Part shown: piece after piece, positions 28,642-60,620 of the stretch
Layout of the letters: every line of letters starts with the position of its first letter
Numbering within the stretch: the first letter of the stretch is position 1
Source: Oikopleura dioica
Taxonomy: Eukaryota; Animalia; Chordata
Reading direction: 5' to 3'
DNA length: 64,000 nt
Assembly (NCBI GenBank): GCA_907165135.1
Contig: OU015568.1
Coordinates: 11,780,001 to 11,844,000 of the forward strand
The notes under the pieces: generated by a model
The model's input: the letters and a program-made list of their open reading frames with translations, nothing else
Told to the model about the DNA's origin: nothing
Databases searched by the model: none
Translations under genes and position numbers: made by a program

Positions 28642-30597
28642 TTTATTTCGAACCCTTCTCACACAGTTGCGATGCTTCTACTGAAACGTTCACGGCCGCT
28701 CAACAACAGAAACATGTTACCTTCATTCAAAAAAATTCTTTCTTTCAAAAAGTAAAATGATGATTCATAGAACTTGAAAGTTCAAAATTTCCATTTGCTG
28801 ATGTTGCTACAGTATAACAATAAATAAATAAGACATTATAAAGTGTAAAGAGATTATTTATTTTGCGCGCTTAGAAAAAAGTGCTCAAAATATCAGTCCA
28901 GTCGCGACCGTTTGCGTGAGGTTCTTCGGTTGTTGGCGATCGTACTTGTTTTCAAGAGTTAGCAGGCTTTATGATTTCATAATGAGATGAATAATAGTCG
29001 AGAGAGTAGTAAAAACAAGGCTTAATTGAGGGTACTAAAACTATGCCAGGTCCTCAAGACTTGCAACTCTTTCCCTTCAAGATGTCTTGATAAATTGATG
29101 GGTTCCGGGTAGCCCAGGAAACTCATCAATTCTCGATCCCGTTGGTTGTGGTTTCTGAAGATTTTGAACTCATTTTACATTTACTATTATCGTTAACTCT
29201 AAAGTTTAGAGTCTAAATTTGCAATCATCGTGAGAATAGCAATAAAAAAGCATATTTCATAAAAGTCAGCTTCTCAGTGAAAATTTATGATCATCTTGTC
29301 TAATTTTCTCGCCTATAACACTTACATTGCGGGGCTAGCAAAGACTGGCGATGCAGCGCAAATCGCAAAAAGAACATCGAAAATGTTCATCGTTTTCTAC
29401 AATTTTAGTATGAAGTATTAGTATGATGATCAGGGGCTTTTATAATGTTTGTAAGATCATCAATTTCTTAATATTTAATCATTTTTTTCACCCTGTTGAA
29501 TAAGTGCATGATCTATGATTTTTATATCAGTGTATTGGTGCTAATGGATTATGCTTATTCAAATAGAGCTGAAGATGATTAGAATCAGTCAAAATTGACA
29601 TGACGGGTAATATTGATCATTTTTGTCTTGAGAAATCATTTCTTCAATTTAAATTTAGATTACTGTAGCAAATATTGCTCAGATAGCATTAAAATCGACC
29701 AACTGTGGTCAGATGAGCTTCTTCATTGAATTTGATGTTGGCGAAACAAAGAATCAGCTCGGATTAAATATAATTTTCGTTCATTATTTTTTGAAAGAAA
29801 TCACCGACGCACACAACCACAAACAATCGTCACCACAGATTTTCAGCTCACAAAATCTCTTCTCATTGTTAGAATATGATCTGACTCGTTGGGTAGCAAG
29901 ATTTGCAGGGCAAAATTCTTGTTCAGGCGAACACGAAACTGTCTATTCTGTCTTTACGGCTATTATTTACGGAGTTGACTTAGGTTTCAGACAGTAATCC
30001 GACCGGCATGATTAATGTTGTCCTTTTTACGTTCTCAGCCGCAGGGATCACCATAAAAGGGTAAAAAGGATTAGCCAGCCCTTCTCGTTAAAATGATCGT
30101 GCAGGTCTCAGGAGTTGAGCTTTTGAATTTGATCCTCATAAACCCTTTTTTATAATAATCTGTAAGAATTCTAAAAGAATTGATCTGAAGGAGAAAACTG
30201 ATTTATCGTTTTATTCATTTTTAAAGAAACAGTTTTATTGTACTCCTCCATCAAATTCGAGTTCAAGTTATTTGAATTAATAAACTTGTCAAAAGGCTTT
30301 TCAGGAAACATGAACGAGGTCAAATACGATTAAATTCTCCGAAGTTTCTGGGGAAAGCGTAATAGGCTCAAAACGCTTAGTGCTTCAAAAATTAAATGCG
30401 GCATGTGCCATTTGGGTCGAGTTTACTAGGCTTGTTTTACTACCATCTCAAACTTTACGGGCTCATTGTCGCAGCGCTTCCGTCATTTAGCCAGAGCCTT
30501 TCGGTCCTGCTAACTGGCTTACAAAGATCCCTAAGATCGACGAGAGAACACCAGAGCTCTGTATCGAGAATAGAGATCCAAGAAGAATGCGATCAGC

Positions 30598-33500
30598 ATG
30601 AAGCGACGATTAGGATTATTGCTATTTCTGAAGCTCTTCGGAGCTGCAGGAATGTGTACCAGAAAAATAATTTTCTCCTATTCTCTAATTTATTTTTAAT
30701 AATTAAACTATTTTAGTTTTAGATTCAAAGAAATATTAGCGTTTGATTTCATTTAAAAGCGGTTGATTTCATTTAAAAGCGGTTGATTTCATTTAAAAGC
30801 GGTTGATTTCATTTAAAAGTAATGAAGAAAGAGCTTTAGGTGATCATAAAATCCGAAAATATCCCGGAATATTAATTGATGGATCACCTTACTTAATGGT
30901 AGATCGATATGTCCTTTTTTCTTGACACAAATACAGAATCAAATACTTACGAATTCCCGGTTGAATTCGTCGTCGACGGACGAAATTATAAGGTTTACGA
31001 GGATCCAACCAATTTTGAAGAAGCCAAGCAAAAATGTGAAGACAATGACGGCCGGGTCCTTCCACTTGATTTGAAGGATAAGGTCGGCTCTCGTCTCCAC
31101 ATTGTCAAAATCGGAGAACGAATCTGGGAATTGACAAATCGTGACTACGACGATATAGATGTTTGGCTGCCCCAGTGTTTGAAAAAACCCGCCCGCGAAT
31201 CCCGCGGGGGCCGCGGGCGGGGGCCACGGGCGCCCGCGCCCCCCGTACCCGCAAGAAATCTCGGATTTGGCCCCCGCGCCCGCCCGCGCCCGTTGGAAAT
31301 TTAAGATCTGGCCCCCGCGCCCTCCCGCGCCCGTGAAAAATTTTTTCGCGCCCGCGGGCGCCCGGGGCTCCCTATAATTTGAATGAAGATAGTTCTGAAT
31401 GTTGGGTTTTCCAATAAAGAAAGGACATAAAGTAGGAAACATGAATCGGGTTGCGCTGGTAGACTTTGGGCCATAAGACTTGGAAACAACGTGTCTCAGA
31501 TGAATTACCATAAGAATTTTTTGGCCGAAAAAAATTTTTTTGAGATAAGATTATATTCTGAAAGCCCAAGTCAAAATTAGTCGATTCCCAAATTTCTAGG
31601 GCTCAATGACGACATTATGACGTCATTTATGATGAATAAATGTCCGAAAAGGCTCCAAATTCATGAAAATTTGGAACGCTTTTTGAGGCGGTTTTTGCTG
31701 GAAATAGATTTTTCTATTGATGACATGTTGTTCGCTATCAAAAACTACGTAGGGACCCGAGTTTTATTTTTCGAACCGACCGGTTTCAAAAATTGAACCG
31801 GTCGGTAATGGTTGATATTCAATGGTTTGATCACGGGTCCCTACGTAGTTTTTCATGGAAAATCCAAATCCGTCGAGAAAAATAAAATTAAATAACGTTT
31901 TCGGCTCGAAAAAGCGTTCCAAAGACAAAATTTTCAATTCAGCCCGATGACGTCATAATGACGTCATCTGACCCTAGAATTTGGTGATTCTGTATAACTT
32001 TTATCGGGCTTTCAGAATATACCAATATCTCAAAAAAAATTTTTTTGCCCGAAAAATTCTTATGGTAATTCATCCTCAGCCCTGTTCCATGATTTTTGAA
32101 TTTAAGGGGCTTGACGGCCCTTCGGGCCGTCTCAGCCCTGTTCCATGATTTTTTAATTTAAGGGGCTTGACGGCCCTTCGGGCCGTCTCAGCCCTGTTCC
32201 ATGATTTTTTAATTGAAGGGGCTTGACGGCCCTTCGGGCCGTCTCAGCCCTGTTCCATGATTTTTGAATTTAAGGGGCTTGACGGCCCTTCGGGCCGTCT
32301 CAGCCCTGTTCCATGATTTTTGAATTTAAGGGGCTTGACGGCCCTTCGGGCCGTCTCGGCCCTGTTCCATGATTTTTGAATTTAAGGGGCTTGACAATGG
32401 CTGGGAACTCTGAGTTGATCAATCTCAGTTTTGTCCCCAACCCCACCCTCACCCATCTTTTGAAAAATTCTTATTATCTTAGTTTTTAGATTAATAATGG
32501 TTTTGATTTTAAATTTTGAGAATATTTTTTTATTTAATTTGCTTAAATATTTTTCGTTAAATTCCCGGGTTCTGCGGGCGCGAGGGGTACGGGCGCCCCT
32601 GGCCCCCTGGGCGCCCGCGGGTCCGATAATTTGCGGGGCCCCCGCCCGCGCCCTCCCGCACCCGCATGAAATTTTCGAGTTGGCCCCCGCGCCCGCCCGC
32701 ACCCGTGGGAAATTTTCGAGTTGGCCCCCGCGCCCGCCCGCATCCGCGGAAAATTTTGAAATCGGCCCCCGCGCCCGCCCGCGCCCGCGGAAAATGTTGC
32801 GGGTTTTCAAACACTGGGCTGCCCTACAAACTAGAAGAGGTCGATAACTTTAGCGCCTTTTAAACTTGGCATGCTATAATTTCACGACTATAAGTTTTAT
32901 TGCCCACTTTGGAGCTAACTTTAATTTGAAATGCAGCCTGCTTTAACTTGGACAGCAATGAAATAACTTTTTGTCATTTTCATGACGATAATTTAAAACT
33001 TTCGGAAAAAAAAGCAAATGTGCGACAATTTTTTTGTCTTTTGGAGATATTTTTTCTTGATGACTTGTTCTGCAAATACTTTTGTTTTTGGAAGATTTAA
33101 GTTATCAACCTCAGCTCAGACCTCGAAGGCGAAAACGCCGACGAGTGGGGATATGTGTACAATAATATCTCAACCATTTCCCTGACAGAGGAACAAATCA
33201 ACTGGGCGACATGTGACCCGCCCATGGATTTTCATCAAAACCAACCTGACGGCGAAGAAAACGGACATTGCCTGACATTCGGATGGAACGAAGAGTACGA
33301 GGGCAATCAAGCCGAGTGCTCGTGGGGCGTCTTTGATAGGTTCGTAAAAATGCAGCGGCTAATAAATATTTATGGACCAGACCGGCCGTTTTGTCAAAGA
33401 TAGACACATTTTTTGCCGGATCTATCAATTTGTTTTCATTATCATGAACATAGCATCAAGTTCATTGGGTACAAATTCGTTAAACAGACATGTAAATTTA

Positions 33501-36500
33501 ATTGAACTCACGAGTAAAGTAATTACACATGTTAATCATTATTTAGCCCTTGCGTCTCATCCACCTTCAAGAAGCCTCTTACTGTTTGTATGCCCTTTGC
33601 TCAAGATAGAGTGCAATACGATGAAAACCGACTTATGCACTGCGAGTTTGCTGATTCTTTCCGAAATATCACCCTGAACATTCAAACGTCTACGTCTAAA
33701 TCTGATGATTATGAATTCCAGATTTACAATCTCAAACATACACTCAACGATGCTTTGGATTTCTGCCTCTGTAAGAACAAGTATCTGATTCCATTCGATC
33801 TGTCGAACCCTCTCTCCGCCGGGTACTTGAACATGATCGGAAACGCGCTCGACAAGGACCTTCCAGGATGTAATAGAGGCTGTGATATGGCCATGTGGCT
33901 CCCTTATCAAAACAAAGCTACTGAAAAATGGATGTTTAGCTATTTCAATGAATTCGCCGTCGAACAAGATGCGATGAGCTGGTCAAAATGTAACGACACT
34001 GTCGGAATCGATCATACGGACCAGCCATTTGGGGAAGACTCAAAATGTGTTGCGTACCATTACATGCCAGAATACAACACCACTGAAGCAGAGTGTGCCT
34101 GGGGACTGTACGATCATCGATGTTACAATGACTTTGAAAATTACTACGATTACGATTACAGACTCACTATCTGTACTGATTTGCCTCCTACCTTCTTTCT
34201 CCCACCAAACTGCCAACCGAAAAAGGATACTGTCGTGCACAGGGTACGTCGAAATCGTATTTTCTTTTTATCTTTCATCTATAAATTGATTACAAATTAA
34301 TGATTCAAAAGGGTCGTTAACTAACGCGGTACTTTAGGAGATCCGCATTACCACACGTACGACGGCGCTCGATACGATTTTATGGGCACCTGTCGATACC
34401 TGCTTACTGCGGCAAAACTGGACACCGATTATGCAAACCTTCCTCCCTTCAAGGTTGAAACTAAACATCGACAAGCTTGGGCTCCACGAGTCACTGTTGC
34501 TATGACTGAACATGTTTGGATCACCTTCCCAGGCGCAAATTTCCCAACAGTCGTCTCTGATATTTATGCAAATAATGGAACAATGACCGACACTGACTGG
34601 GAAGCCGATTGGGAGATCTACTTGTTCATTGCAGATCCTCCACAAGGTTCTGGAAGACCATCACAAGTTGACATGACGATTATGAATCTGAATACCAATG
34701 AGACTTTCCATGTCGGAGAGATGAAGAATTCCGACTTTGAGATTCTCAACGTTGGTAATAAAATTTACTTGAAAGCATGGTTCGGCCTCGAGGTCACTTA
34801 CACTGCCGATCAATGGAAAGTAGAAGTAGAAATTCCTTCCTGCTATGGACAGCGTATGTATGGTCTTTGTGGTAATTTTGACGGAGAACATTCTAACGAT
34901 TGGATATCTGGGGAGAATATGCACCTTGTGGACTATACTGATACTTCTGCTGTTATGCCTTTTACCACTGTTCAAGAGCAAGTCGATTGGGCTCAGACCT
35001 GGGCGACCGTTGAAGAAGACGGTTGCAGTGCTGGCGACCCCCTTGAAAAGTGTGATGCTGAAGACGTCAAAGATAAGTGCTCGCCGATCATCGAGGGCAA
35101 CCGATTTTCTGATTGCCGCGTCTACGTTACCGAATCACTTACCAATCATTTTTACGATGATTGCGTGTTTGATGTGTGCATCGACCGTGAATTGCGATGT
35201 GACATGATTGGACAATTCGTCGACACTTGTCTTGCCGTAATTCCATCTTTCCAGCTTTCATACGGTCTTTGTAATTGGGCGAACGCTTTGGACTGTGCCC
35301 CAGAGTGCCCAGCTAACTCGGCATGGTCGGGTTGTGCTGACATTTGTCGAGATGTCAAAACCTGTGGTAACAAAGATGAAAACGTCGACGAACGTTGTCT
35401 GGACACCCCTAGCTACACTGGTGCATGCATTTGTAACAGTGGATATGTGCTTGAAGGAGGCGTTTGCGTCCCAGAAAGCGAGTGCGGTTGTATTTTATCC
35501 AACGGAGCTTCAGTACCCATCGGCCATACAGAAACAGACTGCGAGCAGACTTGCGAATGCTTCTCTTACGGATACACCTGCCGAGATTTGACAACCGAGG
35601 AAAAAGTCGCCAGAGGTTGTGAGGTCAGCTGTCAAACTCTTCCCCTCCAGAAGTGCTACGGATCTGGTGATCCCCACTACCATACATTTGATGGCTTGAA
35701 TTACGATTTCATGGGACAATGTCGATATAGATTGGTTGAGACTGAACTTGAATCTCTCTCACTTTTTGATAATGTGGTTCCATTCCAAGTCGATGTTGCT
35801 ATGCGAAGAGCATGGGGAGATCGAACTGCTACAATGACGGAACATGTTTGGTTCCAGCTTTACACTGAGAGCATGAAATCAGCAATCAACGAGAATACTA
35901 CTTATCCATATGAGCTTTATATCAACGTTGCAGATCCGCCAGTGCCAACCGAGGCTAAACGGTACCCAACACTTATCAACGCGTACATCTACGACTTGGT
36001 CAACAATAACTCGATCGTGCTGGACGCTCATACAACTTGGGAGCACGACGGTATTAAATTCGAAAATTTCAACTCTTGGGCGCGCATTACGACCTGGTTC
36101 GGCGTAGAGGTCATTTATAAAACGGCGGTGTGGTATGTTGAGGTAAACGTGCCGCAATGCTACCAGACGAAGACTCTTGGCCTTTGCGGTGATTTTGATG
36201 GGCAAAAGTCAAACGAATTCATCCCATACAAAGTCAACACAACGGAAACCGTCGAAGCCAATGTCTTTGGTGATTCTCACAGAGTCGGCGATTGGGAAGG
36301 AAGTCAATGTAACGTAACAACGCCGCCTCCAGAAGAATGCGAGCCGACAGCGACGACTGAAGAGGAATGCGAACTCATCGGAAATGGTGCCTCTGTTTTT
36401 GGCCTGTGTCATCAGTATGTGGATCCTGACATAATCGTCAGTGAGTGCAAATTTGATATGTGCTTGGATAACAGTATCAAATGTGGTATCTATGAGAGCT

Positions 36501-39500
36501 ACATTGGTCAATGTATTGCCGCCATAAGAAAACAAGGAGGTGAAATTCCAGCAAGCATTTGTGACTGGGCAACGGACCTTCAGTGCGCACCTACTTGTCA
36601 TGATGAAAATGAAGTTTTCAAAGGATGCGCTAACACTTGCGATGATTACCGAACTTGTGCCAATTACAACACAGACCTTGACGATTTCTGCCCAAGTGGT
36701 GGTAGCGCTGTTTCTGACTGTGTTTGCAAAGATGGATATGTGCGACACGAGGGAATCTGTCAGCCTGAAGATATTTGCGAAGAAACCTGTGAAGATCGGC
36801 CGGACGGAGTTTGCACAGCAACTGGTGATCCTCATTACAAAACTTATGATGGAGGCCGATTCGATTTCATGGGCACTTGCAAGTACCTCTTGACAGGAGT
36901 TGATGACGATAACGAAAACCCTGATCGAGAAGGCCTTCCTGGGTTTGCAGTCTCTGTCAAACATCGACAAGCATGGTATCCACTTACTGTCGCTATGACT
37001 GAACATGTTTGGATCGACATTCACCAGCAAAACTTCCGCGATCAAGATAATGTCACTGAGCGACGATGGGAAATCTACATGACTATCCCTGAAGAAAATA
37101 GACCGCAAGGACAAGGCAGCGGAAGACCATCCTTCACACAACTCTTTGTTTACGATCGATTAAATGACGTACTCTTGGAAACAAATGAAATGGTCAACAA
37201 CGACTTTAGCGTGATTAATTACGGAAATCAATGTGTCCTTGAGACATGGTTCGGTCTAAAAGTGAAGTACTCTGCTGAAAGGTGGCAGGCCACCGTTGAA
37301 CTCCCATCTTGCTACGAGAACCTTCCAAAGGGTCTCTGTGGTGATTTCAATCGGGAGAACGATGAACCTGTTTCTACGCCTGAAGATGCTTTTGACTGGG
37401 GCCATTCCTGGGCTTTGACCAGCTTCAACTGCTCTGCTGGTGAGATCGTCACCAAATGCCCAGTCGAAGCAGATAAAATTGTTGCAGAAGATCATTGTGA
37501 ACCAATTATTAGCGAAACTGGAATTTTCGCAAACAGCAGTTGTCACGATTACGTTGACCCAGAGTTTCACCACCACGATTGCGTGTTTGACCTCTGTCTT
37601 GATAGTTCTCTCCGTTGTGAAATGATCAGTGGATATGCCGAGGCATGTTTAGATGCCATTCCATCTTGGGAACGACAAGAGCTTTGCGATTGGCATGAAA
37701 AAGTGAACTGCACTCCTACTTGCGGAGCTAATCAAGAGTTCAAAGGATGTGCGAACACTTGCTCTGATGTCATCACTTGCTTGAATAAGGACGAAGATCA
37801 CGTTGAACGATGCGCTGGGAAAACTGAAACTGCTAGCATGTGCGTTTGTAAGGAAGGCTTTGTTCTTTCTGATGGGCAGTGTATTCCAGAAACAGAGTGT
37901 GGTTGCAGAACACCAACTGGTGGCTATGTTGCCCAGGAATTTGTCTACCGTGACTGCAAAGAGAACTGCGTCTGTACTCCCGATGGATATATTTGTACTC
38001 CACTAACTGAGCAAGAGCAAGTCGAAGATGGGTGCATTTCATTTTGCTTTGACGAACCAAAACAAAAATGTTATGGCTCAGGTGATCCTCACTACCATAC
38101 ATTCGATCATTGCAACTTCGACTTCATGGGACAATGCCGATACAGACTCGTAGAAGTTGACTATGAGCACTATGATACCTTCTTCAAGAGAGTTCCATTC
38201 CAAGTTGAAGTTGCTATGCGAAGAGCATGGAATGACAGACCAGCTACGATGACTGAAGCTGTTTGGTTCAACTTATACCTCGAAGATGATGTTATCAACG
38301 AAAATACGACCGCAACTCATACTCTGCATATCTACGTTGGTGATCCACCACAGGGAAGTGGTCTTCCAAGACAAGTTGTTACAGAGATCACTGATAACAC
38401 AAAGATGGTCAACAATACAATCGTTTTGGGCGACTACGAAGTCTGGTCGCATGGAGGAGTTACTTTCCAGAATTTTGCTTCGCACGCTAAGATTACAACT
38501 TGGTTCGGTGTCGAGGTCGTCTACAATACGGCTGTCTGGTACGTTGAAGTTTTAGTCCCAGATTGTCTCCAAGAAAGAACTTATGGTCTTTGTGGTAACT
38601 TCAATGGTCAGTGTTCCGATGAATATTCGATCATTTATGGAACCAATATCACCGATAACACGGATATTGACAGATGGGGCGACTCTCACCAAACAGCAAA
38701 TTTTACTCTTGAAGACGATGCAAGCATCTGCGGCCCACCAATTCCAGTCGAACCGTGTGATCCTGATGCTCAAGACATCAACATCGTCCCTCATTGTGAG
38801 AAGATGGCAGATGCAACTTCACTATTCGGTCAATGTCATGAGCTTGTTACTCCTGATATCATCGTCAGTGAATGCAAATTTGACATGTGTCTTGACCAAT
38901 CGATCGGTTGCATGATCTACGAGTCTTATTTCAACCAGTATCTTTCGCTCGCTGCCAATGTTTCTACTGAGATTTGTGAATGGAGAAGCCAAGGACTCTC
39001 AGAAATGGACTACGATTGTTCTGTAGACTGTGGTGACAATGCCTTCTGGACGGCATGTGCAGACTCGTGCGACGATTTCAGAACATGCGAAAACCGATTA
39101 GTTCCAGATGAAGAGCACTGCCCAGTTCGATCACGTGTCTCTGGATGCATTTGTGGCGACGGTTTTTACAGAGAAAATGGCGCTTGTATTCCTGAGGCAG
39201 ATTGTGGATGTTTCATCGGCGAAAACAACGATGAGTACGTTCAAAAGGGATATCTTTATGATGAGTGCGATCAACGATGCGAATGTCTTGGAAATGGCAA
39301 CTATTTTTGCCGAGACTGGACTGAACAAGAACTTATTGACAAGGGATGCATAACTGACTGCCGCCTCGAGGAAAAACAGAAGTGCTATGGCTCCGGCGAT
39401 CCTCATTATCACACGTTCGATCATTGCAGTTTCGACTTTATGGGGCAATGTCGATACCGACTTGTTGAAGTGGATTATGAGCATTTTGATACCAACTTCA

Positions 39501-42500
39501 CTCGTATTCCATTCCAAGTGGAGGTTGCTATGCGAAGAGCATGGAACGATCGACCAGCTACGATGACAGAAGCTGTTTGGTTTAACTTGTATCTGGAAGA
39601 TGATGTTATCAACGAAAATACGACCGCAACTCATACTCTCCATATCTACGTGGGTGATCCACCACAGGGAAGTGGTCTGCCAAGACAAGTTGTTACAGAG
39701 ATCACTGATAACACAAAGATGGTCAACAATACAATCGTTTTGGGCGACTACGAAGTCTGGTCGCATGGAGGAGTTACCTTCCAAAATTTTGCCTCTCATG
39801 CTAAAATCACCACTTGGTTCGGTGTCGAAGTCGTCTACAATACGGCTGTGTGGTACGTCGAAGTTTTAGTTCCCAACTGCCTCAAGGAAAGAACTTATGG
39901 TCTTTGTGGTAATTTCAATGGTCAGTGTTCCGATGAATACTCGATCATTCATGGAACCAATATCACCGATAACACCGATGTTGACACTTGGGGCGACGCA
40001 CACCAAACTGCGAATTTCACTCTAGAAGATGATGCAAGCATCTGTGGACCACCAATCCCAGTTGAACCTTGCAACCCAGATGACGAAGATGTCAATATTG
40101 TCCCTCACTGTGAACAGATAGCCGATGCTTCCAGCCTTTTCGGAGAGTGCCACTCTCTCGTCACTCCTGATGTGATTGTTGATGAATGTAAATTTGATAT
40201 GTGTCTCGACCAATCAATCGGTTGCATGATCTACGAATCGTACTTTAACCAGTATCTATCGGTTGCGCAGAATGTCTCTGACGAAATTTGCGAATGGAGA
40301 AACCAAGGTCTTTCGAAGATGGACTACGACTGTTCAATTAATTGTGGCGATAACGCCGCTTGGACCGCTTGCGCAGACTCTTGCGACAATTTTAGAACAT
40401 GTGAAAACAGATTTGTACCCGATGATGAACACTGTCCCGTTAGATCCACTGTCTCCGGATGCATTTGTAACGACGGCTTCTTCCGAGAAGACGGCGATTG
40501 TATCCCTGAAGCTGACTGTGGATGTTTTATTGGTGACAACAACGACGAGTACGTTCAAAAGGGATATGTCTACGACGAGTGCGATCAGCGATGCGAATGT
40601 CTTGGAAACGGAAACTACGTCTGTCGAGATTGGACTGAACAAGAGCTCATTGACAACGGATGCATAACTGATTGCCGTCTTGAGGAAAAACAAAAGTGCT
40701 ATGGCTCTGGAGATCCTCACTACCATACTTTCGATCATTGTAACTTTGATTTCATGGGACAGTGCCGATACCGACTAGTGGAAGTGGATTATGAGCATTT
40801 CGACACCAATTTCACCCGCATTCCATTCCAAGTCGAGGTTGCTATGCGAAGAGCATGGAACGATAGACCAGCTACGATGACCGAAGCTGTGTGGTTCAAC
40901 TTATACCTCGAAGATGATGTTATCAACGAAAATACGACCGCAACTCATACACTGCATATATACGTTGGCGATCCACCTCAGGGAAGTGGTCTTCCAAGAC
41001 AAGTTGTCACAGAAATCACTGATAATACCAAAACCGTCAACAACACGATTATTTTGGGCGACTACGAAGTCTGGTCGCATGGAGGAGTTACTTTCCAGAA
41101 TTTTGCTTCGCACGCTAAGATTACTACTTGGTTTGGTGTTGAGGTCGTCTACAATACGGCTGTCTGGTACGTTGAAGTTTTGGTTCCCAACTGCCTGAAA
41201 GAAAAAACGTATGGTCTTTGTGGTAATTTCAATGGTCAGTGTTCCGATGAATACTCGATCATTCATGGAACAAATATCACCGATAACACCGATGTTGACA
41301 CTTGGGGCGACTCTCACCAAACTGCAAATTTCACTCTAGAAGATGACGCAAGCATCTGTGGACCACCAATTCCAGTCGAGCCATGTGATCCTGATGCTCA
41401 AGACGTCAACATCGTCCCTCATTGTGAGAAGATGGCAGATGCAACTTCACTTTTCGGTCAATGTCATGAGCTTGTTACTCCTGATATCATCGTCAGTGAG
41501 TGCAAATTTGACATGTGTCTTGACCAGTCCATCGGTTGCATGATCTACGAGTCTTATTTTAATCAGTACCTTTCGCTCGCTGTCAACGTTTCTACTGAGA
41601 TTTGTGAATGGAGAAACCAAGGACTCTCAGAAATGGACTACGATTGTTCTGTAGACTGTGGTGACAATGCCTTCTGGACGGCATGTGCAGACTCGTGCGA
41701 TGATTTCAGAACATGCGAAAACCGATTAGTTCCAGATGAAGAGCACTGCCCAGTTCGATCACGTGTCTCTGGATGCATTTGTGGCGACGGTTTTTACAGA
41801 GAGAATGGCGCTTGCGTCCCAGAAGCAGATTGTGGATGTTTCATTGGTGAGAACAACGATGAATATGTTGAGAAGGGATATATCTACGACGAGTGCGATC
41901 AACGATGTGAATGTCTTGGAAACGGAAACTACGTTTGTCGAGATTGGACCGAGCAAGAGCTAATCGACAGCGGATGCATTACTGATTGTCGACTTGAGGA
42001 GAAGCAAAAGTGCTATGGCTCCGGCGATCCTCACTACCATACTTTCGATCATTGCAATTTTGATTTCATGGGACAGTGTAGATATCGACTTGTGGAAGTG
42101 GCTTATGATGATCTTGATCGAAATTTCACCAGAATTCCATTCCAAGTGGAAGTTGCTATGCGACGAGCATGGAATGATAGACCAGCTACTATGACAGAAG
42201 CTGTTTGGTTTAACTTATATCTCGAAGATGATGTTATCAACGAAAATACGACCGCAACTCATACTCTGCATATCTACGTTGGTGATCCACCACAGGGAAG
42301 TGGACTGCCAAGACAAGTTGTTACAGAGATCACTGATAACACAAAGGTGGTCAACAACACGATCGTTTTGGGCGATTACGAAGTCTGGTCACACGGCGGA
42401 GTTACTTTCCAAAATTTCGCTTCACATGCTAAGATTACAACCTGGTTCGGCGTCGACCTTGTCTACAACACTGCTGTTTGGTATGTCGAGGTTATGGTTC

Positions 42501-51500: not shown

Positions 51501-54500
51501 ACACAATCGAACCCACAACGATTAATACTTCTACGGAGTCGACGACTAGCGAAGTAGGAACAATGTCAACTGTGACAGACAATCAGACAGTTGAGCCCTC
51601 TTCGACATCGACAATATTTACCACATCCACTGAAGTTGAAATAGGAACCTTCTCAACTGTCACGGACAACTCAGGGGTCGATACAACATTCTCATCCACT
51701 ACACAAACCACAGAATTTATTACAACTACCTCATTTACTACCTCAACAACATCCACAACAACATCTACAACCACAACATCAACAACATTACAAGCAACGA
51801 CATCGACCATTCGTTCGACCCCATCCACCATTGTCACAACCACCACCTCTCAAGAAACCACTTCTAGTTCCACCACTAGCTCCACCAGTAGCCAAAGCAC
51901 CACGACGTAATTTAAAACAAAAGCGCATGATCAACATCGTATACCCACTTCGTTTGAAATCAAACGGTCAATCAAGAGCGCCAAAAGACTTTTGGACACC
52001 AAAAGAAGTAACATGCTTTGCCTATATAACACAAACTATTGTCGAAAATTTCTTAACATATTCTTTTAGTGTTGTTATTGATTCCTGCAAAGGTAGCATT
52101 CAAGACGCGTTCGTCGCAAATTTCAGTTCCCTTGGAGCCGTTTTGACTGTGGAGGCGATGTAAGATCTCCGAATGTTAAAATTTATCACCATAATCAATT
52201 TAGGGAAAGTGATGACTGGTTCTCCCTGTCTTTTGCCAGTCTTCTCTCGAGCAATGCTGCTGGATTCTACGCACTCCGATATTCCAACTTCTACTACCAC
52301 GCTCTTCAGAGAATAAGCATCATTGAAGAACTCAACATATCTCAAGACGACACGATTTGCGCTGCTTTCTCACAAAACTTCCATATTGACACTATAACGC
52401 TGATCGCAGAGTATCAATTGACTGTCGAAACAGTCGTTTGGGAAATTCATTCACAGGCAATTCATCTTGAAACCTGCTTTGCAACCAATCAATTTGCCAA
52501 TGAAACCCTCAAGGCATTTGGAATCGAAATGGAAAATGAAAGTGACCTTGCAATTATTACGAAGCTTGCTATTTGTGCATACACCATGGAACACTTTAAC
52601 GCTGCGACTTACTCGCTCTACGACATAAACGTTTTCTTCTATGCATATTTTGAATTCTATGTGAACTATTTCGTCAGCTTTGGGTAGGTTTGCTTTTATT
52701 TCAAAATAAGCATAAATTTCTAGCTACGAATTTACTGGCTGGGAGCTTTCACTTTCTGCTGATGGTTTAGTTACTTACTGGATGAATATTCTCATCTTCA
52801 TCCAATCTGGGTACTTCTCTGTTGACTTGGTTGACTGGACCTTCTTCTATGACATGACGGCACTTATATTCGATTGCGCGACATTCAGCGATCTTCTGGC
52901 TGAAATAGGATGGGAAAATAATGATTTCAGTTGCCAGGCCGATTATTTTGTATCTTTCTGGGAGGTCGATTACGATTTCAACTTCGAGTTCAAACAGCTT
53001 TTCCTTTTCTTCGAATATCTGGATCTTGACTTCAAGGTTTTACTTTTTATGCATATTTTTATTAAATTCTAATTAGATGCTTTACTACATCAAATACGAT
53101 CTTTCTGTGGCACTCGAAACTGGACAGATGACCTGGTTCACTGGAAGCGGATTCGAAGCGTATGTTACCTTCCTCCAAGACTGGTGGGCAAACGTGTGCG
53201 TTATGAATCTGATCAATGTGTACGGATTTGATATTAACATCAACCAGTATGTTGGATACTTCTACTCCCCTGTATTTGGAGCGCTCGCACAAAGAATGTA
53301 CTGTTTCAATTTCTACGCTGGCTCCGATCTTCTTGAAGGCTGGTTTATCGCATGGTCAAATTTCGGTTTTGGATTTGACTTGATTAATTTCGACTTCGGC
53401 ATTGAAGGCGTAGAAATCGAGCTCGCTCCGCTTTCCATCCAGCAAACTTTTATCATGCGCTTCTTCGAAAGCGACTTCTTTACATCATTCGGATTCTCCG
53501 CTGATTTCATCAGCCTCCTACGAGTTTGGACCTTCTCATTCAAGGGATTCCGTGTTGGAGAAATCCAAGCGTTCTTCTTCGGTGATTTCGGGTTCAAGTA
53601 AGTTATCAAGTTTTGAACTCATTGCGAACTTAAATGTAGCAATGTCCATTTTAATGACATCCTTTCTGAGGGTAACTTTTTACTACCTCGTCATTTTATT
53701 ACGAGAAAACAATAAAACATATTTAGTTTCATCACGTCGATCGATGGTTACGCTGGATTTGAAGCTGAGTTCGCGAAATTCCAGACAATAATCTACAGTC
53801 CAGAATTCGCTGTCTTCTTCTATCAGCTTGAAGTACTTGCTCACATTGAAGCCAAATTTGTTAGCGGATCTGTCGCCAACTTTGGCTGGGCTGAATTCAG
53901 CGCTTTGGATTTGAGCGTTATTGACTTGAGCTTCATTCGATCAGAAATCACTTATGATGTGCATTTTGGATGGATCGAGGCCATTCTTGTTGGCTTTGAT
54001 GTCAATCTCTTCTTTGTCGAAGCTGACTTCTATGTGATCTACAGCGCAATTTCTGTTCAACTTATCGAATGGCAACACAATTTCTTCGTTATCTTTGAAG
54101 GCGCTGCGTTCTCCTGGATGCATGATATTACCGGACTTACAGTCGGAAACAACTATCTTATCGATTATGTCAAGGAGCAAGTGCGAACTCTTACGTTCTC
54201 TTCAGTGACTTCTGAGACTTACATCGCCGCTTATGGCTCCTTCGCAAATGGTTTTATTTGCCAGATGAGTGCCCTGCTCAAACTTATAATCGCTGACACT
54301 GCAACATCTTACCATCTTGGTGGTTATTCCATTAGCGAATTCTATGTTAGCTACTTCACTTCAATGCAGAGCTACTTTATTGGCTTACTTTCTTCATCGG
54401 ACTACGCCGTCGATTTCACCTCCTTTAATCTCAATACCATTGATGCTTTCATTGCGTCTCAGGACTTCAGTATTTCCACAAGTGTTCTTCACAATACCTA

Positions 54501-57500
54501 CACTTTTGATATCTCGCAAACATCTCTTGCCCAATATGTCTTTAGTTGGGCCCACCAGACTTATCAATTGCCTTCAATGTCTGCTTATGCCGATTTTACT
54601 ATCGAGGGACGATATGATTTCGGTCTCCTCATGTATTTCATCGGTGGTTCTCAATGGATCTTCGAAGCTTCAGACTCTTACACTTCTTATCAAGCTTACC
54701 TTGCGGAATATTACAATACTTTCTATCTGGATTTGGATGCAACTATCAAGGAACACGATTCTGCGATGATCATATCGAAGATTTCTGAAATCTGGAAGTT
54801 CCACGGTGCAAGAGTTTTCTTTGCCTATTCCGATGCAATGATGTACATGTACAGCAACAGCTTTGATCTAAGCTCTTTGAATATTGACTTGTTCGATCTT
54901 ATGAACTCTTATTATATCGCCTATGATGGAATCTACTGGATTTCTTCTATGGAAATTTCCACCGATTTCAACGCCGCATTTGTCAGCGTTAACTCCGAGT
55001 TCGCGTACGACTGGACCGCAACTATCCAAACTCAAATGTACAGCCATATCATCCAATCTCATTTGTATTCTTACGGAATTTGGACAATCGGAGAATCACA
55101 TGAAACGATCAACAGTCTCCTAAGCGTCGAATCTTCTTGGACTGCTCTCGGGGAGAGCGAATGGGACCTCTCATCAACCCCGTCGCAACCTGCTCTTGTT
55201 TCTGCATACAAGATTATTGCTGATGCCGGATTCTCTTCCTACAAAGTTGACTACTTGCTTACCTATCAATTCCAGGGAATGTTGAATTTCTTCGAAATTT
55301 CCAGGGTTCTCTACGCGGACTACGAAGCTGATACTCTCGCTAAATACTTGATGCAATTTGAACGTCTCTTCATGGGATACGAATGGGGATACTACTACGA
55401 AATCCAAGACAACTCTACTTTCACTAATTTCGCAGCCGATCTTGAGACGACTACTTCTATTGCTGGATACTCTGTTAATTTTGCATGGATCGATTCAGCC
55501 TGGTACAGTTACGATTTCTCCACGCTCTTTGATACGATCATTTTCTCCGGTTACCCTGTTGATTGGTCTGCATGCTCTGCTACTTGCGGAACGGATGTCT
55601 ACCAATACAAAAATAGAGCTTGCCGAATCGATTCCCATCCAGAGTATACTTTTGGATGCATTGGAGATCTGCAAAAAGAAAATCGTTGTCACGTCTCCTC
55701 GTGTGAAACTGACTTTAACGCAGAAATCTTGACCATCAAGCTTTCAATCATTATCAATATGAAATTTACCTTGACAACCGGTCTTATTTCTAACGACATG
55801 TTCGCATCAAGCATGACTATTGACTATGATGCAAGTAACTACGGTATGTTGCTCGTTTTCCAAAGCTTTGGTGATGCAGATTCTTCATTTGGACAAACTA
55901 TTTCTGCCTCGATGACTGATGACACAGATGGTAATACGAAGGTCTTCGTTGGTCTTTCTATTTCTGGTTTCTCTGCTGCCCGATCAACTGGTCGCAGGCG
56001 AAGACGTTCGGTTCCTCTTCTGGAAGGAGAAAGATTCCGTCGGCAAGCTGATAATTCAACAACTACAACCGCTGCTGCTACGACAACAACTAGTACAACC
56101 ACTTCCACGACTACAAGTACATCCACGAGTACAACAACTACTTCTACAACAATTACTTCCACAACAACATCTACATCAACAACATCGTCGACATCAACAA
56201 CGATAACAACGTCGACATCAACATCATCGACATCAACAACATCATCGACATCAACAACATCGACATCAACAACATCTTCGACATCAACAACATCGTCGAC
56301 ATCAACAACGACAACATCGTCGACATCAACAACATCGTCGACATCAACAACGACAACATCGTCGACATCAACAACATCGTCGACATCAACATCTTCGACA
56401 TCAACATCAACGTCAACAACAACAACTAGCACAACTACCTCTACCACAAACTCATCAACCTCCACAGTAGAAACAACAGCATCAAGTAGCACAACCAGTA
56501 CAACAACAACCACAACCTCAACCAGTACCAGCACAACATCTGAAGAAACAACAACAACAACTGCTAGTACCACTGAAGAAGCAACGACCGATGTTTCTTG
56601 CACCGCGATCGTTACTGCAACAATGGTTCTCGACAAAACTTGGACAAGTACCTTGGCAAGCTCTGTCGAAGTTGACTACACTGATTTGGTCGCAGAAGTG
56701 AAGGCAGCTGTCGAAGCCGTTACGTTTGACATTGGTGACTCAGAATTCACAAGTGTTGATGTAACAGGATTCACGCAAGTCACAAGTGATGCTCGCCGAA
56801 AACGCCGAGAAACTGGCGATGTCGAAGCTTCAGTAGATATTTACTTTACAGCTACAACCCAAGTAAAAGAAAGCGAAGCTGAAGCTGCCAAGGAGGATGA
56901 CGCTACCTTTGAAGAAACTGTTACTGGGCTTGAAGAAGCTGTCCTAGAGTCTTTGACTGCTGGTGATGTTGACATTCTTGCCCAAGATGTGACGGAAGTC
57001 GAGTCTGATATTATCCTCGAAGATGAAGAAGAAGAGGATTATGAAGTCTCCGCAACTGTGGCTGCTGAGTATGAACAAACTAAAGAATACCCTGAGGACC
57101 CAACTGCTACTTGTGAAGACCCTGTGGAGATTGATCTTAATGATGACTCCATCGAAGAAGTTGTTGGCTGTGACGCCGCTGAGGAAGTTGATGCCGGGGC
57201 AGAAGCTGCCGGAGATGCTATCAACGACGCTATTGCTGACAGTGATATTGCTGATGGAACAGCATTGGTTGGATCAGTTGCGACGTTGGTTGACAAATTC
57301 GAGCCAGATTCTTCAACTACAACAGGTACTACGACAACCTCAACAACAAGCACCACGACATCAACCACGACAACAACGACCACTTCCACAACATCCACGA
57401 CAACAAGCACCACCAGTACAAGTACTAAAACACTGAGCACATCATCAGTTATGAGCACAAGCACTATAAAATTAGAAAGTCCGACCACTGTCAACGACCA

Positions 57501-60500
57501 ATTCACACCAAGCGCACAAGACACAACTATCGAATCAACTTCTGTTTCTACGAGCACTATTCAGTTAGATATTGAGAGCACAGTCTTAGATCAGAATACA
57601 CCCGGCACTGAAGGTAAATTTTTCACTTGGAATATCGGCCAACCTATCATCACAGAACAGTATTGGATTTGAATCGATCACTTAGATGATTCATAAAAAC
57701 TTCGATCAAATGTTTATAATTATAATCACGAACACGACCCCGAAAATTCGCAAAATCATAGGGAAAATCAGCGTCAGTTCTCACTTTCAGAGATTGAATA
57801 TTTGGAAAAATAAAAATTTGAGCTTATTATCAAGTTGTCGAGCACTTATCACAAAATCACATAAGTTATGTGACAAAATAAAACTTTTACATCTATCAAA
57901 TTTGTTACTTAGCATCAACAACAACAACTACGACAACAACTACGACAACAACTACGACAACAACTACGACAACAACTACAACAACAACTACCACAACAAC
58001 TACAACAACAACTACAACAACAACTACAACTACAACTACAACAACTACAACCACTTCAACAACAGGTAAAAAGTCGTTTTCGAGAAAACACTCAAATTGA
58101 TTGTAAAAAATCAAATTTTTTTCTTTCAAAAATACGGGTCTTGTTTTTCTCTATAGAACTTTCCACGGCAGCTAGTGGAACAAGTACACCTATAGAAACT
58201 ACGTCGAGAGACTCAACTTCAACTCAGGAGTTAGGCACAAGCACATTTGTGTCGACGACTGAGGTTGTCGTTGAGACGGAAGGTAAACCTGACATAAGCT
58301 GTTCTGCGATTCGCGAGGCAATTTTAGTTGTTATAGCCCTATTAAAGAGTCGTGAGTTACGACTCGTAACATTCTTGGAAAACCGAGAAAAAAGAAAAAA
58401 TGTGCATGAATTTCCGGCTGGTTGTCACAAGCGGACTCATTTTTCGGGGATTCATTTATCGAAATTCGAGTTAAACGTGCAACCGACGATATCTTTTATT
58501 TTTAGTTATACAGTATAACTTATACTCATGCATGATGCATCCGTTATAGATATATCGCCGATATAATATCGGGTTTCTGAGATAATATCTCGACTCATAT
58601 AATTTTTATTTCGGCTTACAAAAATCTATAGAGAATGTTACGGACAAGAACACTCCTGGACCAACGGAGAGCTCTACAGAGTCCTCTTCTGTAGTTACTT
58701 CTACTGAGACTATAAGTGAAACGACAGAAGGTACCAACGAATGCAAAGCATTTCGCTTGTAATTTAGCTAAGTAATGAGAAAGTCGAAACGACATTCTAC
58801 AACAGAGTAGCCAAAAGATGCTACTTTTTACTTTTATCCAGACTCTGGATTCCAGAGCATTCCTCTCTTTTTCTTCATTATTTTTACCATTTTGCGATTC
58901 GCAAGACATTTTTCCGTCGTTACTAACGACTGGTTTTTTGGGGATCCGAGTGTGCATAAGGTTTAACACTGGAAGCAATGTTTGATTCAATAAGATCATG
59001 CATCCCTTTTATTGAGTCTCCGAGACAACATCTCGACTCTTATTGTTCTCTTTTTAATTTAATATCTTTTTAGAAACAACTACTTCAACTTCTACAACAA
59101 CGTCAACTTCCACGACAACAGAATTTGTGCAGCCTGAATGCAACGAGCTCTGCAAAGAAGATTGGTCTCCATGGGAGCCGTGCTCTCATGAGTGCTGGTC
59201 TACTGAAGATGAATTCGAAAATGTTCGTCAAGTAAGATTCAAGTGCTTCGAGAACGCTGAGTTTGAAACTTGTTACGAAACGCAACGATGCTTCAACGAG
59301 ACCCACAAAGAAGAAACGGAATGTCCAACAGCCGAAGAGGTTAAAGCCGACTTAAATGTTGATGATCTTGACGCGCTTAAAGAAAATGGACTTGGTATCA
59401 TTAACATATTCGTTGATTTCAAGGTGATATTTTTAAGTCTATTCGTTCTCCAAAATCGTTTAGATCGCTATCTCTGAAAAATGGAATGATGATTACGCCA
59501 ACCCTAATTCCACTGCATTTAACGTCAAGGCTGCCAAATACACTGGAGTCATGAGAGAGTGGTTTGACTTTGCTGGTGCTTTCAAATTTGTTTCTCTTGA
59601 TCCTGTCAACATGAAAAAATCGGATGTTCCTCTTGAGTGCGATACGACCGGTGTACCATCGATTTCTGATCAAGCAGCGCTTGATGAAGAGTTGATTGTC
59701 ACTGATGCTGATGTTATTTTGAATAATCCATACATTGATGAGATCGGATCTGAGTAAGTAAAAAGAACTTTACTTGTTCTATTATTATTATTAGTGGTCG
59801 ACGGCGACGTGACATCGATGAAGCCGTCAAACGAAGCCGTATCGAATGCGCAGACTCTGACTTGATCATCTTCCACTTGCGAACGCGCCACAAAGTCGTG
59901 ACGAGCTTTAGCTACACTGAAGTCAGCCAAGCTGTCCTTCGTCAGCTCTCTCCGATTCTCAAAAATTCCGGCGCACAGGTCGTCTCCGCAGACGAAATGG
60001 GTGAAAAAATCAATGAACAACTGGAGGAACAAGTCCAAGACGATGGCAAGCCACAAAACTCGAATAACTTGAATTTCCAGGCTTTTGGAAGTAAGTCGAC
60101 GTAAACATTTATCGTTCATTATCAATTCAATAGAAACACGGGTAACGAAAGAGGACAAAGCCGTTGTCGGTGAGTGGAAGGCCTGGGACAACAGCGGCTG
60201 CCCAGCGTCCAGATCTGAGAGGACTCGCGATTGCATCATTAACAACAACCAAGAAAAAGTCGTTCCAAATGAAGATTGCCTCGCAAATGCGCCAGAAGGC
60301 ACAGTTTTCGTTGATGACCGAGAATGTTGTACTGACCGAGAGAATTACTCAGAAGAAGACGAGAAAGTATGTGAATGCATGTATCCTTGGTCGGCTGACG
60401 CTAATGGAGACTGTAACACCTGCATAGCCCTGAGACCGATGCAATTCTTGTGTTATATTTGTAAGTATTATTCAATAATTAATTATTTAAGCATTTTAAT

Positions 60501-60620
60501 TTCAAATTCTCACTCAAAATTTCAGCCGGGGAATTCGATAATCCCAAAGACAGCAGTTCAACCACTACTGCTCTGTCCCTACTACCTCTCCTGACGATGT
60601 TCTGGCTCCACCTCAATTAA
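30598..60620 (+). CDS. Giant (~7,400-7,500 aa) predicted GPI-anchored extracellular protein: 2 C-type lectin, 9 vWD/C8/TIL, mucin, aromatic region, TSP1, SEA-like, furin sites
   Basis: Signal peptide MKRRLGLLLFLKLFGAA (30598-30649). About 22 exons are phase-compatible from 30598 to 60620, needing one GA-AG intron, one GC-AG intron, one 1-nt correction at 34220-34224 and removal of two transposons. The last exon encodes SGEFDNPKDSSSTTTALSLLPLLTMFWLHLN*. Domain calls are strong; the single-transcript model is inference. Confidence 0.75.
30741..30820. repeat. 20-bp tandem repeat x4 in intron 1 of the giant gene
   Basis: Unit GGTTGATTTCATTTAAAAGC, four near-perfect copies. Confidence 0.95.
31499..32074. 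mobile_element. Foldback MITE (576 bp) nested in hAT element 1
   Basis: TIR GATGAATTACCATAAGAATTTT. The arms stay complementary inward (TATATTCTGAAAGCCC, TGACGTCA motifs, AAAAACTACGTAGGGACCCG). Flanked by CTCA direct repeats at 31495-31498 and 32075-32078. Confidence 0.85.
32075..32395. repeat. 56-bp minisatellite x5.7, each unit with an 8-bp-stem hairpin
   Basis: Unit CTCAGCCCTGTTCCATGATTTTTGAATTTAAGGGGCTTGACGGCCCTTCGGGCCGT. Hairpin GACGGCCC-TTC-GGGCCGTC spans the unit end. Confidence 0.95.
38069..43327 (+). repeat. Four highly similar 1,314-bp (438-aa) vWD-C8-TIL coding repeats
   Basis: GDPH codons start at 38081, 39395, 40709 and 42023, exactly 1,314 bp apart; the next is at 43340. Confidence 0.95.
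46860..47130 (+). repeat. 36-bp coding repeat (FTDGFTESATE[A/T]) x~7, acidic mucin-like
   Basis: Repeated FTDGFTESATE/FTESPTE in ORF 46362-47420. Confidence 0.85.
49124..49699. mobile_element. TTAA-targeting MITE a
   Basis: TIR GGCTACGGGGGTCGACG versus CATCGACCCCCGTACCC (2 mismatches). TTAA at 49120-49123 and 49700-49703. Confidence 0.8.
49704..50076. mobile_element. TTAA-targeting MITE b
   Basis: Perfect 17-bp TIR GGAGGGGGTCGACGAGA / TCTCGTCGACCCCCTCC. TTAA at 49700-49703 and 50077-50080. Confidence 0.88.
56058..56572 (+). repeat. Ser/Thr-only coding tract (TSTTSS-type repeats)
   Basis: About 170 codons almost all Thr/Ser, built from ACATCAACAACATCGTCG-like units. Confidence 0.9.
57912..58065 (+). 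repeat. Poly-Thr exon (ACA/ACT/ACG microsatellite)
   Basis: Bounded by …cttag and gtaaa. Reads ASTTTT…TT, built from ACAACAACTACG/ACAACAACTACA units. Confidence 0.85.

What the first reader, a model, noticed from the sequence alone, without database searches (positions are those of the whole stretch)
30598..60620. One ~30-kb gene encoding a ~7,450-aa lectin/vWD/mucin/SEA/TSP1 surface protein with a GPI-type tail
Seen: the exon chain is phase-consistent from a signal peptide to a classic GPI signal (DSSS, polar spacer, hydrophobic end). Domain order: CTL x2, (vWD-C8-TIL) x9, acidic TESF repeats, T/S repeats, aromatic region, TSP1, furin sites, S/T tract, SEA-like, S/T, TSP1-like, SEA, furin site, TSP1, Cys-rich, GPI. 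Known: FCGBP, zonadhesin, tectorin and gel mucins share the vWD-C8-TIL unit, but I know none with this combination. Inference: in a larvacean this is a candidate scaffold of the secreted mucous house, tunic or filter mucus, linking a glycan-binding tip to a membrane anchor.
Basis: partly seen in the sequence, partly recalled or inferred. Interest (0 to 1): 0.85.

Follow-up and report, generated by a model that had tools for sequence, protein, structure and literature searches.

The report
Giant membrane-anchored mucin of Oikopleura
A planktonic tunicate has one very large gene, split into two pieces in GenBank, that most likely makes a 7,000-7,500-residue surface mucin joining a sugar-binding tip, a gut-mucus-like stalk, a large domain of no known family and a lipid anchor; where in the animal it acts is not known.

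Summary
Mostly real. Window 30598-60620 is one 23-exon Oikopleura dioica gene of ~7,457 aa: signal peptide, two C-type-lectin-like domains, nine GDPH-type vWD-C8-TIL units, mucin tracts, a ~1,080-aa aromatic/acidic domain of no known family, TSP1, SEA-like domains with furin sites, and a GPI-type tail. The Bergen orthologue (same neighbours) gives a stop-free 20-exon, 6,961-aa chain with same-phase introns, including GA and GC donors. GenBank splits it into CBY23993 and CBY23992. dS is saturated, dN 0.09-0.23.

An A-run at 34220 lacks one base (two other animals have it: probable assembly error). A hAT-like insert splits exon 2 (apparently absent in one other animal). A second insert needs GC-AG splicing.

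It is not oikosin 30 (26% identity), FCGBP, a gel mucin or tectorin. It most likely works as a GPI-anchored, shear-released glycocalyx mucin. No spliced RNA was seen, and the house role has no support: the gene could not be matched to the published house proteome. New variant of a known kind.

The parts
30598..30649 (+). Exon 1: start codon and signal-peptide-like N-terminus; GA donor (AG|GAA) at 30650
   Evidence: Sequence; same peptide and same GA donor in Bergen; best 9-residue hydropathy 2.4; SignalP not available
30937..31172 (+). Exon 2, part before the insert: first half of C-type-lectin-like domain 1
   Evidence: 82% identical to the orthologue L006
31173..32816 (.). Insert 1: non-autonomous hAT-like element (13-bp TIR, 8-bp target duplication GGCTGCCC, nested repeats) inside exon 2; probably polymorphic
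   Evidence: absent in Bergen; one full-depth X3 contig leaves the reference exactly at 32817 with 52 letters left over (inferred empty site)
32817..32840 (+). Target duplication and rest of exon 2 (YKLEE); probable one-base-offset donor at 32840/32841
   Evidence: not shown by RNA
33120..33339 (+). Exon 3: second half of lectin-like domain 1, with a QPD motif
   Evidence: 83% identical to L006; acceptor 33119 conserved
33547..34243 (+). Exon 4: C-type-lectin-like domain 2 and start of vWD unit 1; 1-nt loss in the A-run at 34220-34224
   Evidence: 86% aa identity, dN 0.09, dS saturated
34338..44564 (+). Exon 5 (10.2 kb): vWD-C8-TIL units 1-8; units 4-7 are 85-95% identical; GC donor at 44565
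   Evidence: GC donor conserved in Bergen
44726..47326 (+). Exons 6-8 (44726-44926, 45199-45940 with GA donor, 46349-47326): vWD unit 9, then acidic 12-aa T/E/S/F repeats. This is the stretch GenBank leaves out between its two Bergen models.
47451..51906 (+). Exons 9-10 (47451-48290, 50761-51906): acidic and S/T mucin tract, one exon in Bergen
48288..50749 (.). Insert 2: hAT-like element (14-bp TIR, target duplication GATCCAGA, 17-bp arrays, nested inverted repeats). A GC-AG intron 48291-50760 would remove it and leave DPDSTT unchanged.
   Evidence: splicing not shown
52070..55555 (+). Exons 11-15 (first part): ~1,077-aa domain, 21.6% Phe/Tyr/Trp, 2.7% Lys/Arg, no clear transmembrane segment, no internal repeat, predicted all-helical; no known family
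   Evidence: 65-69% identical in Bergen, 27-28% in two distant marine sequences
55556..56050 (+). TSP1 repeat, a beta-alpha-beta segment resembling half a SEA domain, and first furin cluster (55993-56040)
   Evidence: Pfam TSP_1 E 0.007, below cut-off; half-SEA is a pattern-level inference
56051..56589 (+). S/T tract (92% Ser+Thr)
56590..57309 (+). SEA-like domain with RRKRR between strands 2 and 3, then an acidic Cys-containing segment
   Evidence: Ferredoxin-like topology in a low-confidence model (pLDDT 50); SEA structures Z 5.2, not above unrelated ferredoxin folds; 78% identical in Bergen
57310..58730 (+). End of exon 15 and three symmetric phase-1 S/T cassette exons (57913-58065, 58157-58282, 58632-58730); two such cassettes in Bergen
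59074..60090 (+). Exons 19-21: TSP1-like repeat (WSPW), SEA-like domain with a long loop holding the third furin site (59799)
   Evidence: Pfam SEA E 0.019, below cut-off; matched in L002
60134..60620 (+). Exons 22-23: TSP1-like repeat, Cys-rich (EGF-like in the distant homologue) end, GPI-type signal, stop. AATAAA follows at 60807.
   Evidence: same kind of tail in Bergen and in L002; no GPI predictor available

Best explanation
One gene encodes a ~830-kDa (before glycosylation) GPI-anchored surface mucin.

Shown here: one open, conserved exon chain; the domain order; purifying selection along the folded parts.

Inferred from related families: the chain enters the ER. Each vWD domain cuts itself at GDPH but stays tied by a disulfide, as in FCGBP. 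About 1,300 residues of S/T tract are O-glycosylated into rods. Furin nicks three sites, at least two of them in the strand 2-3 loop of SEA-like domains, and the halves stay together until pulled. The tail is swapped for a GPI anchor. The result is a long tether on an epithelial surface: lectin tip outermost, then vWD stalk, mucin rods, a helical aromatic domain, then break points next to the membrane. Shear or pull would release the outer part into mucus.

Tissue unknown. My odds: gut, pharynx or endostyle surface 0.35; house-making epithelium 0.3; gametes 0.15; other 0.2.
For: Stop-free chains in two lineages (7,059 aa from 34225; 6,961 aa in Bergen). Same-phase introns including GA and GC donors. 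GA donors fit the AG|GAA context known for O. dioica (PMC7072748). Same flanking genes. CBY23992 starts at an internal Met inside a mucin exon and has no signal peptide. dN 0.09-0.23 with dS saturated or >1.8. Best solved relative of a vWD unit is FCGBP, whose GDPH sites are all cleaved and disulfide-held (PMC8267560). Furin cleavage in the strand 2-3 loop of SEA domains with force-dependent release is described for GPR126, Notch and MUC1 (PMC6954182). The aromatic-TSP1-furin-SEA-like-TSP1-GPI order recurs in a 27%-identical marine sequence.
Against: No spliced or full-length RNA. The RNA reads laid came from the Bergen-type lineage, at low depth, and ran into intron 4 unspliced. SEA and TSP1 calls are below Pfam cut-offs and the SEA model is weak. 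GPI anchoring, cleavage, glycosylation and lectin activity are all inferred. Whether the vWD half is attached in the distant species is unknown, because contig L002 begins in a mucin tract.
Confidence: 0.65

Rival explanations
1. Same single gene, but it is a tether between oikoplastic cells and the pre-house rudiment. It holds the cellulose/oikosin scaffold by its lectin tip or aromatic domain and lets go at the furin-nicked domains when the house inflates.
For: Distant paralogues (oikosin 30a-e) are house proteins, one with a C-lectin domain, and the authors name GPI-anchored oikosins as candidate links to the membrane (PMC3390340). Relatives of the aromatic domain were found only in O. dioica and two unidentified marine sequences.
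Against: Not matched to the oikosin catalogue: oikosin 30c 26.6% identical, oik30a primers at least 6 mismatches from the Bergen orthologue. The vWD half offers about 100 usable tryptic peptides. A cell-anchored protein could, however, stay behind when rudiments are lifted off.
Confidence: 0.3
2. Two separate genes, as GenBank has it: a secreted FCGBP-like protein and a GPI-anchored mucin.
For: CBY23993 and CBY23992 are separate models 3.2 kb apart; no RNA joins them here.
Against: The gap holds three conserved coding exons with the ninth (Bergen eighth) vWD unit, stop-free and in phase in both lineages. The upstream model ends mid-unit three codons into a GC-donor intron. The downstream model has no signal peptide.
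Confidence: 0.07
3. One gene with two products: the full anchored form, and a shorter secreted lectin-vWD form made when the GC-donor intron 5 or GA-donor intron 7 is kept and a stop follows within a few codons.
For: Both introns have non-GT donors followed soon by in-frame stops in both lineages; unspliced reads were seen at intron 4.
Against: About 11-12% of O. dioica introns are non-canonical (PMC8008620), so such donors are ordinary; no 3' end was seen.
Confidence: 0.2
4. The gene is real in the species but this haplotype is a broken allele (transposon in exon 2, frameshift in exon 4).
For: Insert 1 lies inside coding sequence and seems absent from another animal; the A-run is short by one base.
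Against: Both other animals have the extra A at full depth, as expected for a homopolymer error in the assembly. The insert offers in-frame GT donors (31175 to 33114; 31177 to 33119 or 33101). There is no premature stop elsewhere.
Confidence: 0.15
5. A gamete or sensory matrix protein, working like zonadhesin (sperm-egg coat binding) or like alpha-tectorin/otogelin (anchored, then released into a gel over sensory cells).
For: Both families use tandem vWD-C8-TIL units tied to a membrane; alpha-tectorin is GPI-anchored and released by cleavage (own knowledge). The repeat number differs between lineages (8 against 9).
Against: No MAM, NIDO or ZP domain. Folded domains are under strong purifying selection, with no sign of the fast change usual in gamete-recognition proteins.
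Confidence: 0.2

Closest known systems
FCGBP (IgGFc-binding protein)
   Same: Long run of vWD-C8-TIL units with GDPH before each vWD and xGLCG rather than CGLC; best sequence and PDB matches (24-28% identity; 8rde, 8r0t).
   Different: No FCGBP_N domain (two lectin-like domains instead); FCGBP is secreted and lacks mucin rods, SEA, TSP1 and an anchor.
Oikosin 30a-e of O. dioica (PMC3390340)
   Same: Same species, vWD-C8-TIL repeats, house proteins; oik30e has a C-lectin domain.
   Different: 26.6% identity to oikosin 30c; other N-terminus; GDPH in only some units; 253-400 kDa; no furin sites, mucin half or GPI tail in oikosin 30c. The oik30e sequence was not retrieved.
Membrane mucins with SEA domains (MUC1, MUC3/17, MUC16) and MUC4
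   Same: S/T rods, SEA-like domain cut in the strand 2-3 loop, Cys-rich end near the membrane; MUC4 joins a mucin tract, a GDPH-cleaved vWD and an anchor (own knowledge).
   Different: GPI-type tail instead of a transmembrane helix with cytoplasmic tail; furin sites instead of GSVVV; nine vWD units, lectin tip, TSP1 repeats and the aromatic domain.
Gel-forming mucins (MUC2/5/6/19)
   Same: vWD-C8-TIL units followed by Ser/Thr-rich tracts.
   Different: Nine units, not three plus one; no CGLC motifs; no cystine knot; anchored.
alpha-Tectorin and zonadhesin
   Same: Membrane-tied tandem vWD-C8-TIL units; GPI anchor and release in tectorin (own knowledge).
   Different: No NIDO, ZP or MAM domain; different order.
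CBY23993.1 (E4X4K3) and CBY23992.1 (E4X4K2), O. dioica Bergen
   Same: These two unnamed GenBank models are the two halves of the orthologue.
   Different: They miss the signal peptide, both lectin domains and exons 6-8, and are not joined; no paper in the library mentions CBY23992, E4X4K2 or the scaffold FN653024 (the CBY23993 ids were not searched).

Membership tests
FCGBP | N-terminal FCGBP_N (PF17517) domain (PMC4948705) | tested here: not met
   No such hit on exons 2-5; the N-terminus is lectin-like
FCGBP | Many tandem vWD-C8-TIL units with GDPH | tested here: met
   Nine units, nine GDPH
FCGBP | Autocatalytic Asp-Pro cleavage with disulfide-held fragments | not testable with these tools
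   Motif and upstream Cys present; cleavage inferred from PMC8267560
Gel-forming mucin | Three vWD-C8-TIL units, PTS tract, usually a fourth unit and a cystine knot (PMC4948705) | tested here: not met
   Nine units before the tract; C-terminus is SEA-like/TSP1-like/GPI-type
Gel-forming mucin | CGLC motifs in vWD domains (own knowledge) | tested here: not met
   All nine read xGLCG with Y, L, K or F before G
Oikosin 30 | Shared N-terminus and high similarity to oikosin 30a-e | tested here: not met
   26.6% to oikosin 30c; probe-encoded peptides are in P0216, P0081 and P0214 but not here. Oik30e judged only from SignalP values almost identical to 30c/d.
Oikosin (any) | Made by the oikoplastic epithelium and found in the house | tested here: inconclusive
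   No match found in the catalogue of PMC3390340; only five of the probe primers were tested; no tissue data
SEA-type membrane mucin | Long Ser/Thr-rich tracts | tested here: met
   About 1,330 aa at 44-92% Ser+Thr, Pro under 4%
SEA-type membrane mucin | SEA domain (ferredoxin-like) cut between strands 2 and 3 | tested here: inconclusive
   Right topology with RRKRR in that loop, but pLDDT 50, SEA structures Z 5.2 among unrelated folds, Pfam E 0.019 for the second copy
SEA-type membrane mucin | Transmembrane helix and cytoplasmic tail | tested here: not met
   The chain ends in the hydrophobic stretch; GPI-type pattern in three sequences
alpha-Tectorin / zonadhesin | NIDO and ZP, or MAM domains | tested here: not met
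   None in Pfam scans of the exons
C-type lectin domain | CTL fold and sugar-binding motif | tested here: inconclusive
   Domain 2: Atlas 0.94, 27 of 30 hits Lectin_C, no Pfam hit. Domain 1 resembles domain 2 (E 3e-9) and has QPD in both lineages. Binding untested.
GPI-anchored protein | Signal peptide, small-residue omega site, polar spacer, hydrophobic end | tested here: inconclusive
   Pattern present and conserved; no predictor or experiment available

The most novel reading that the evidence does not exclude
The ~1,080-aa aromatic, acidic, all-helical domain is a new extracellular module (binding cellulose, lipid or itself), and the protein is a larvacean-specific tether that holds a mucus filter or the house rudiment to the cell surface and releases it at furin-nicked domains under pull.
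Probability: 0.2. Interest if true: 0.8.

Novelty: new variant of a known kind. Interest (0 to 1): 0.55.

Why it matters
It would be among the largest surface glycoproteins of a chordate with a miniature genome, and it joins the two mucin plans (vWD assemblies and SEA-type release) in one chain. It carries a conserved 1,000-residue domain that no family library, structure library or protein-language-model search explains. It shows that non-GT donors split a large O. dioica gene in the public annotation, so house and mucus proteomes searched against that annotation may need repeating. How larvaceans attach and let go of houses and feeding mucus is open, and this gene gives a testable candidate, though nothing here ties it to that job.

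Tried and rejected
Length-limited homologue searches with the vWD exon returned FCGBP and zonadhesin at about 23-36% and missed the 2,374-aa orthologue model, whose cluster representative is shorter. They cannot see a 7,400-aa entry, so that blank says nothing. Pfam on the lectin, aromatic and first SEA-like exons: no useful hit. PDB sequence search with the SEA alignment: nothing. AlphaFold2 of the aromatic domain: pLDDT 40, pTM 0.33; Foldseek and Atlas matches are meaningless, and the Atlas feature search gave no usable hit, so no claim of a new fold is made. Multi-pass membrane protein: rejected, best 19-residue hydropathy 1.6. Internal repeats in the aromatic domain: none. Identity with oikosin 30: rejected. 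GT at 34248 as the exon 4 donor: rejected. A short ORF at the start of L006 as signal peptide: rejected, it is intronic. Linking the gene to 'zonadhesin A/B/C' of the 2026 single-cell preprint: not possible, identifiers cannot be mapped. The (1/3)^18 figure for phase agreement overstates the case because I chose among candidate sites; the cross-lineage conservation is the real test.
Full report
Scope and method. I rebuilt the exon chain from the window, looked for orthologues, laid reads on 5.2 kb, and tested each domain call. It was built only inside local scripts, with X at the frameshift in the final version, to count residues and to compare with sequences already fetched. No contig looked human. 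One human FCGBP protein and some human PDB chains appeared in hit lists and were not used further.

The observation. From 34225 the chain is open for 7,059 aa through 19 introns, and the whole is 7,456-7,458 aa. Pfam finds VWD, C8 and TIL. There are nine GDPH motifs; units 4-7 are 85-95% identical and the others 32-58%. The second lectin-like domain is supported by the ESM Atlas (0.94) but not by Pfam; the first resembles it and has a QPD motif. TSP1 and SEA hits are below cut-off. A low-confidence model of the first SEA-like domain has ferredoxin-like topology with RRKRR between strands 2 and 3, but does not single out SEA structures.

Faults in the chain. First, exon 4 ends out of phase. The orthologue reads through to GDPH with the strong donor at the 34244 position. 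Contigs of two other animals from two studies both have an extra A after 34219 at full depth. A homopolymer error in the assembly is the likeliest cause; a private null allele is not excluded.

Second, two elements with terminal inverted repeats and 8-bp target duplications lie inside coding sequence. Insert 2 can be removed by a GC-AG intron that leaves the protein unchanged; in Bergen that region is one exon. Insert 1 splits exon 2. It is absent in Bergen, and one full-depth contig of run X3 leaves the reference exactly at its boundary, so it is probably polymorphic (inferred, the loose letters were not displayed). It offers in-frame GT donors of its own.

Third, intron 2 has no standard in-frame donor at the empty site. 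This rests on sequence only.

One gene. A HMMER search with the aromatic exon found three clusters among 1.84 billion proteins. The closest cluster holds CBY23992.1 of O. dioica Bergen. On scaffold FN653024.1 it lies 3.2 kb behind a vWD model, CBY23993.1, between the same neighbours as in the window (carnitine acyltransferase upstream, an FWWh-domain gene downstream). The gap holds three coding exons, stop-free and in phase, with the same GC and GA donors as the window, and CBY23992 starts at an internal Met. The full Bergen chain has 20 exons, 6,961 aa, eight vWD units and one stop, at the end. All its 19 introns have a same-phase counterpart in the window; for those around the S/T cassettes the match is by phase and region only. 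The GA donors fit the AG|GAA context reported for this species (PMC7072748). Folded parts are 69-86% identical with dN 0.09-0.23 and dS saturated or above 1.8. The window is therefore O. dioica of another lineage; which assembly it is was not determined.

RNA. Run X19 gave 99 reads, nearly all under 90% alike and with Bergen-type letters, at depth of up to about 12. Their loose ends run into intron 4, and no splice joint was listed. X16 gave five reads. There is thus no proof here of a mature or full-length mRNA, and no tissue information.

Distant relatives. Two marine metagenome sequences match the aromatic domain at 27-28%. Contig L002 continues with TSP1, a furin site, S/T tracts, SEA-like domains with furin sites, more TSP1 repeats, an EGF-like end matching ours (E 1e-10) and a GPI-type tail in phase. 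P0109 has a TSP1 repeat ahead of its aromatic domain, so the module may be tandem there. The species are unknown; another appendicularian is my guess. Whether they carry the vWD half is unknown. The aromatic domain is 21.6% Phe/Tyr/Trp and poor in Lys/Arg, has no clear membrane span, is predicted helical, and is unexplained by Pfam, PDB or the Atlas, with a model too weak for fold claims.

How it likely works. Shown: one conserved chain and its order of parts. Inferred: GDPH self-cleavage with disulfide-held fragments (PMC8267560), O-glycosylated rods, furin nicks in SEA-like loops whose halves part under force (PMC6954182), and a GPI anchor. That is a long, sheddable surface mucin with a lectin tip. 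Confidence is about 0.85 for one anchored mucin gene and 0.65 for this mechanism. The tissue is open.

Comparison with what is known. It works like a membrane mucin carrying an FCGBP-like stalk. It is not a member of FCGBP (no FCGBP_N), gel mucins (wrong unit count, no CGLC, no knot), tectorin or zonadhesin (PMC4948705). The vWD house proteins, oikosins 30a-e, are distant paralogues: oikosin 30c is 26.6% identical with another N-terminus, and the oik30a probe peptides map to it and its Okinawa relatives, not to this gene. Oikosin 30e, which has a C-lectin domain, could not be fetched; its SignalP values match 30c/d, so it probably shares their N-terminus. O. dioica was already known to have 17 multi-vWD proteins (PMC4948705). 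No paper in the library names CBY23992 or its scaffold, or holds four of five terms for this architecture; subscription journals are not covered.

Verdict. A real, conserved, mis-annotated giant gene with a new combination of mostly known mucin parts and one large unexplained domain. Observation partly confirmed; house role unsupported. New variant of a known kind, interest 0.55.

Noticed in passing
window 32840-33119; L007 8586-8773: Intron 2 is best read as cut one base off an available GT (TC..AG here, TT..AG in Bergen), with complementary letters changing together on both sides; looks like another case of the one-base-offset intron class.
   Followed up: partly
window 48288-50760: The end of the transposon supplies a GC donor and the flank an AG so that splicing restores the same amino acids; a possible intron gained from a hAT-like element.
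   Followed up: partly
window 52684-52723: A 40-nt GT-AG intron present here and absent at the same place in Bergen (L004 11777-12593 is one exon): intron gain or loss between lineages.
   Followed up: partly
window 38060-43320; L004 1600-6800: vWD units were multiplied separately in the two lineages: four near-identical units in a row here, an alternating A-B-A-B pattern in Bergen.
   Followed up: partly
window 57913-58730; L004 17292-17690: Symmetric phase-1 Ser/Thr cassette exons (three here, two in Bergen) could be skipped in frame and change the stalk length.
   Followed up: no
window 30396-30597; L007 about 7870-8090: The 200 nt upstream of the start codon contain blocks that look conserved between the lineages, although introns are not; possible promoter or 5' UTR elements (seen by eye).
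   Followed up: no
window 37675: Both other animals carry three more letters (in frame) here than the window.
   Followed up: no
window 60880-62220 (minus strand): A small EF-hand-like calcium-binding gene (read by eye) lies tail to tail with the mucin gene; Bergen has an assembly gap over part of this place.
   Followed up: no
window 434-28205: Upstream neighbours by Pfam: Hsp70, C2H2 zinc fingers, a CFAP74/Hydin-type Ig-repeat protein, a P-type ATPase, a carnitine acyltransferase; a WW-domain gene by synteny with L007.
   Followed up: partly
L003 (P0109): A TSP1 repeat precedes the aromatic domain in this distant sequence, suggesting tandem copies of the TSP1-aromatic module in another species.
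   Followed up: no
P0214 (OKI2018 PAR.g8984), P0081 (chr1.g3625): Unnamed Okinawa proteins that carry the oikosin 30a probe peptides and alternate GDPH and non-GDPH units: likely oikosin 30 orthologues.
   Followed up: partly
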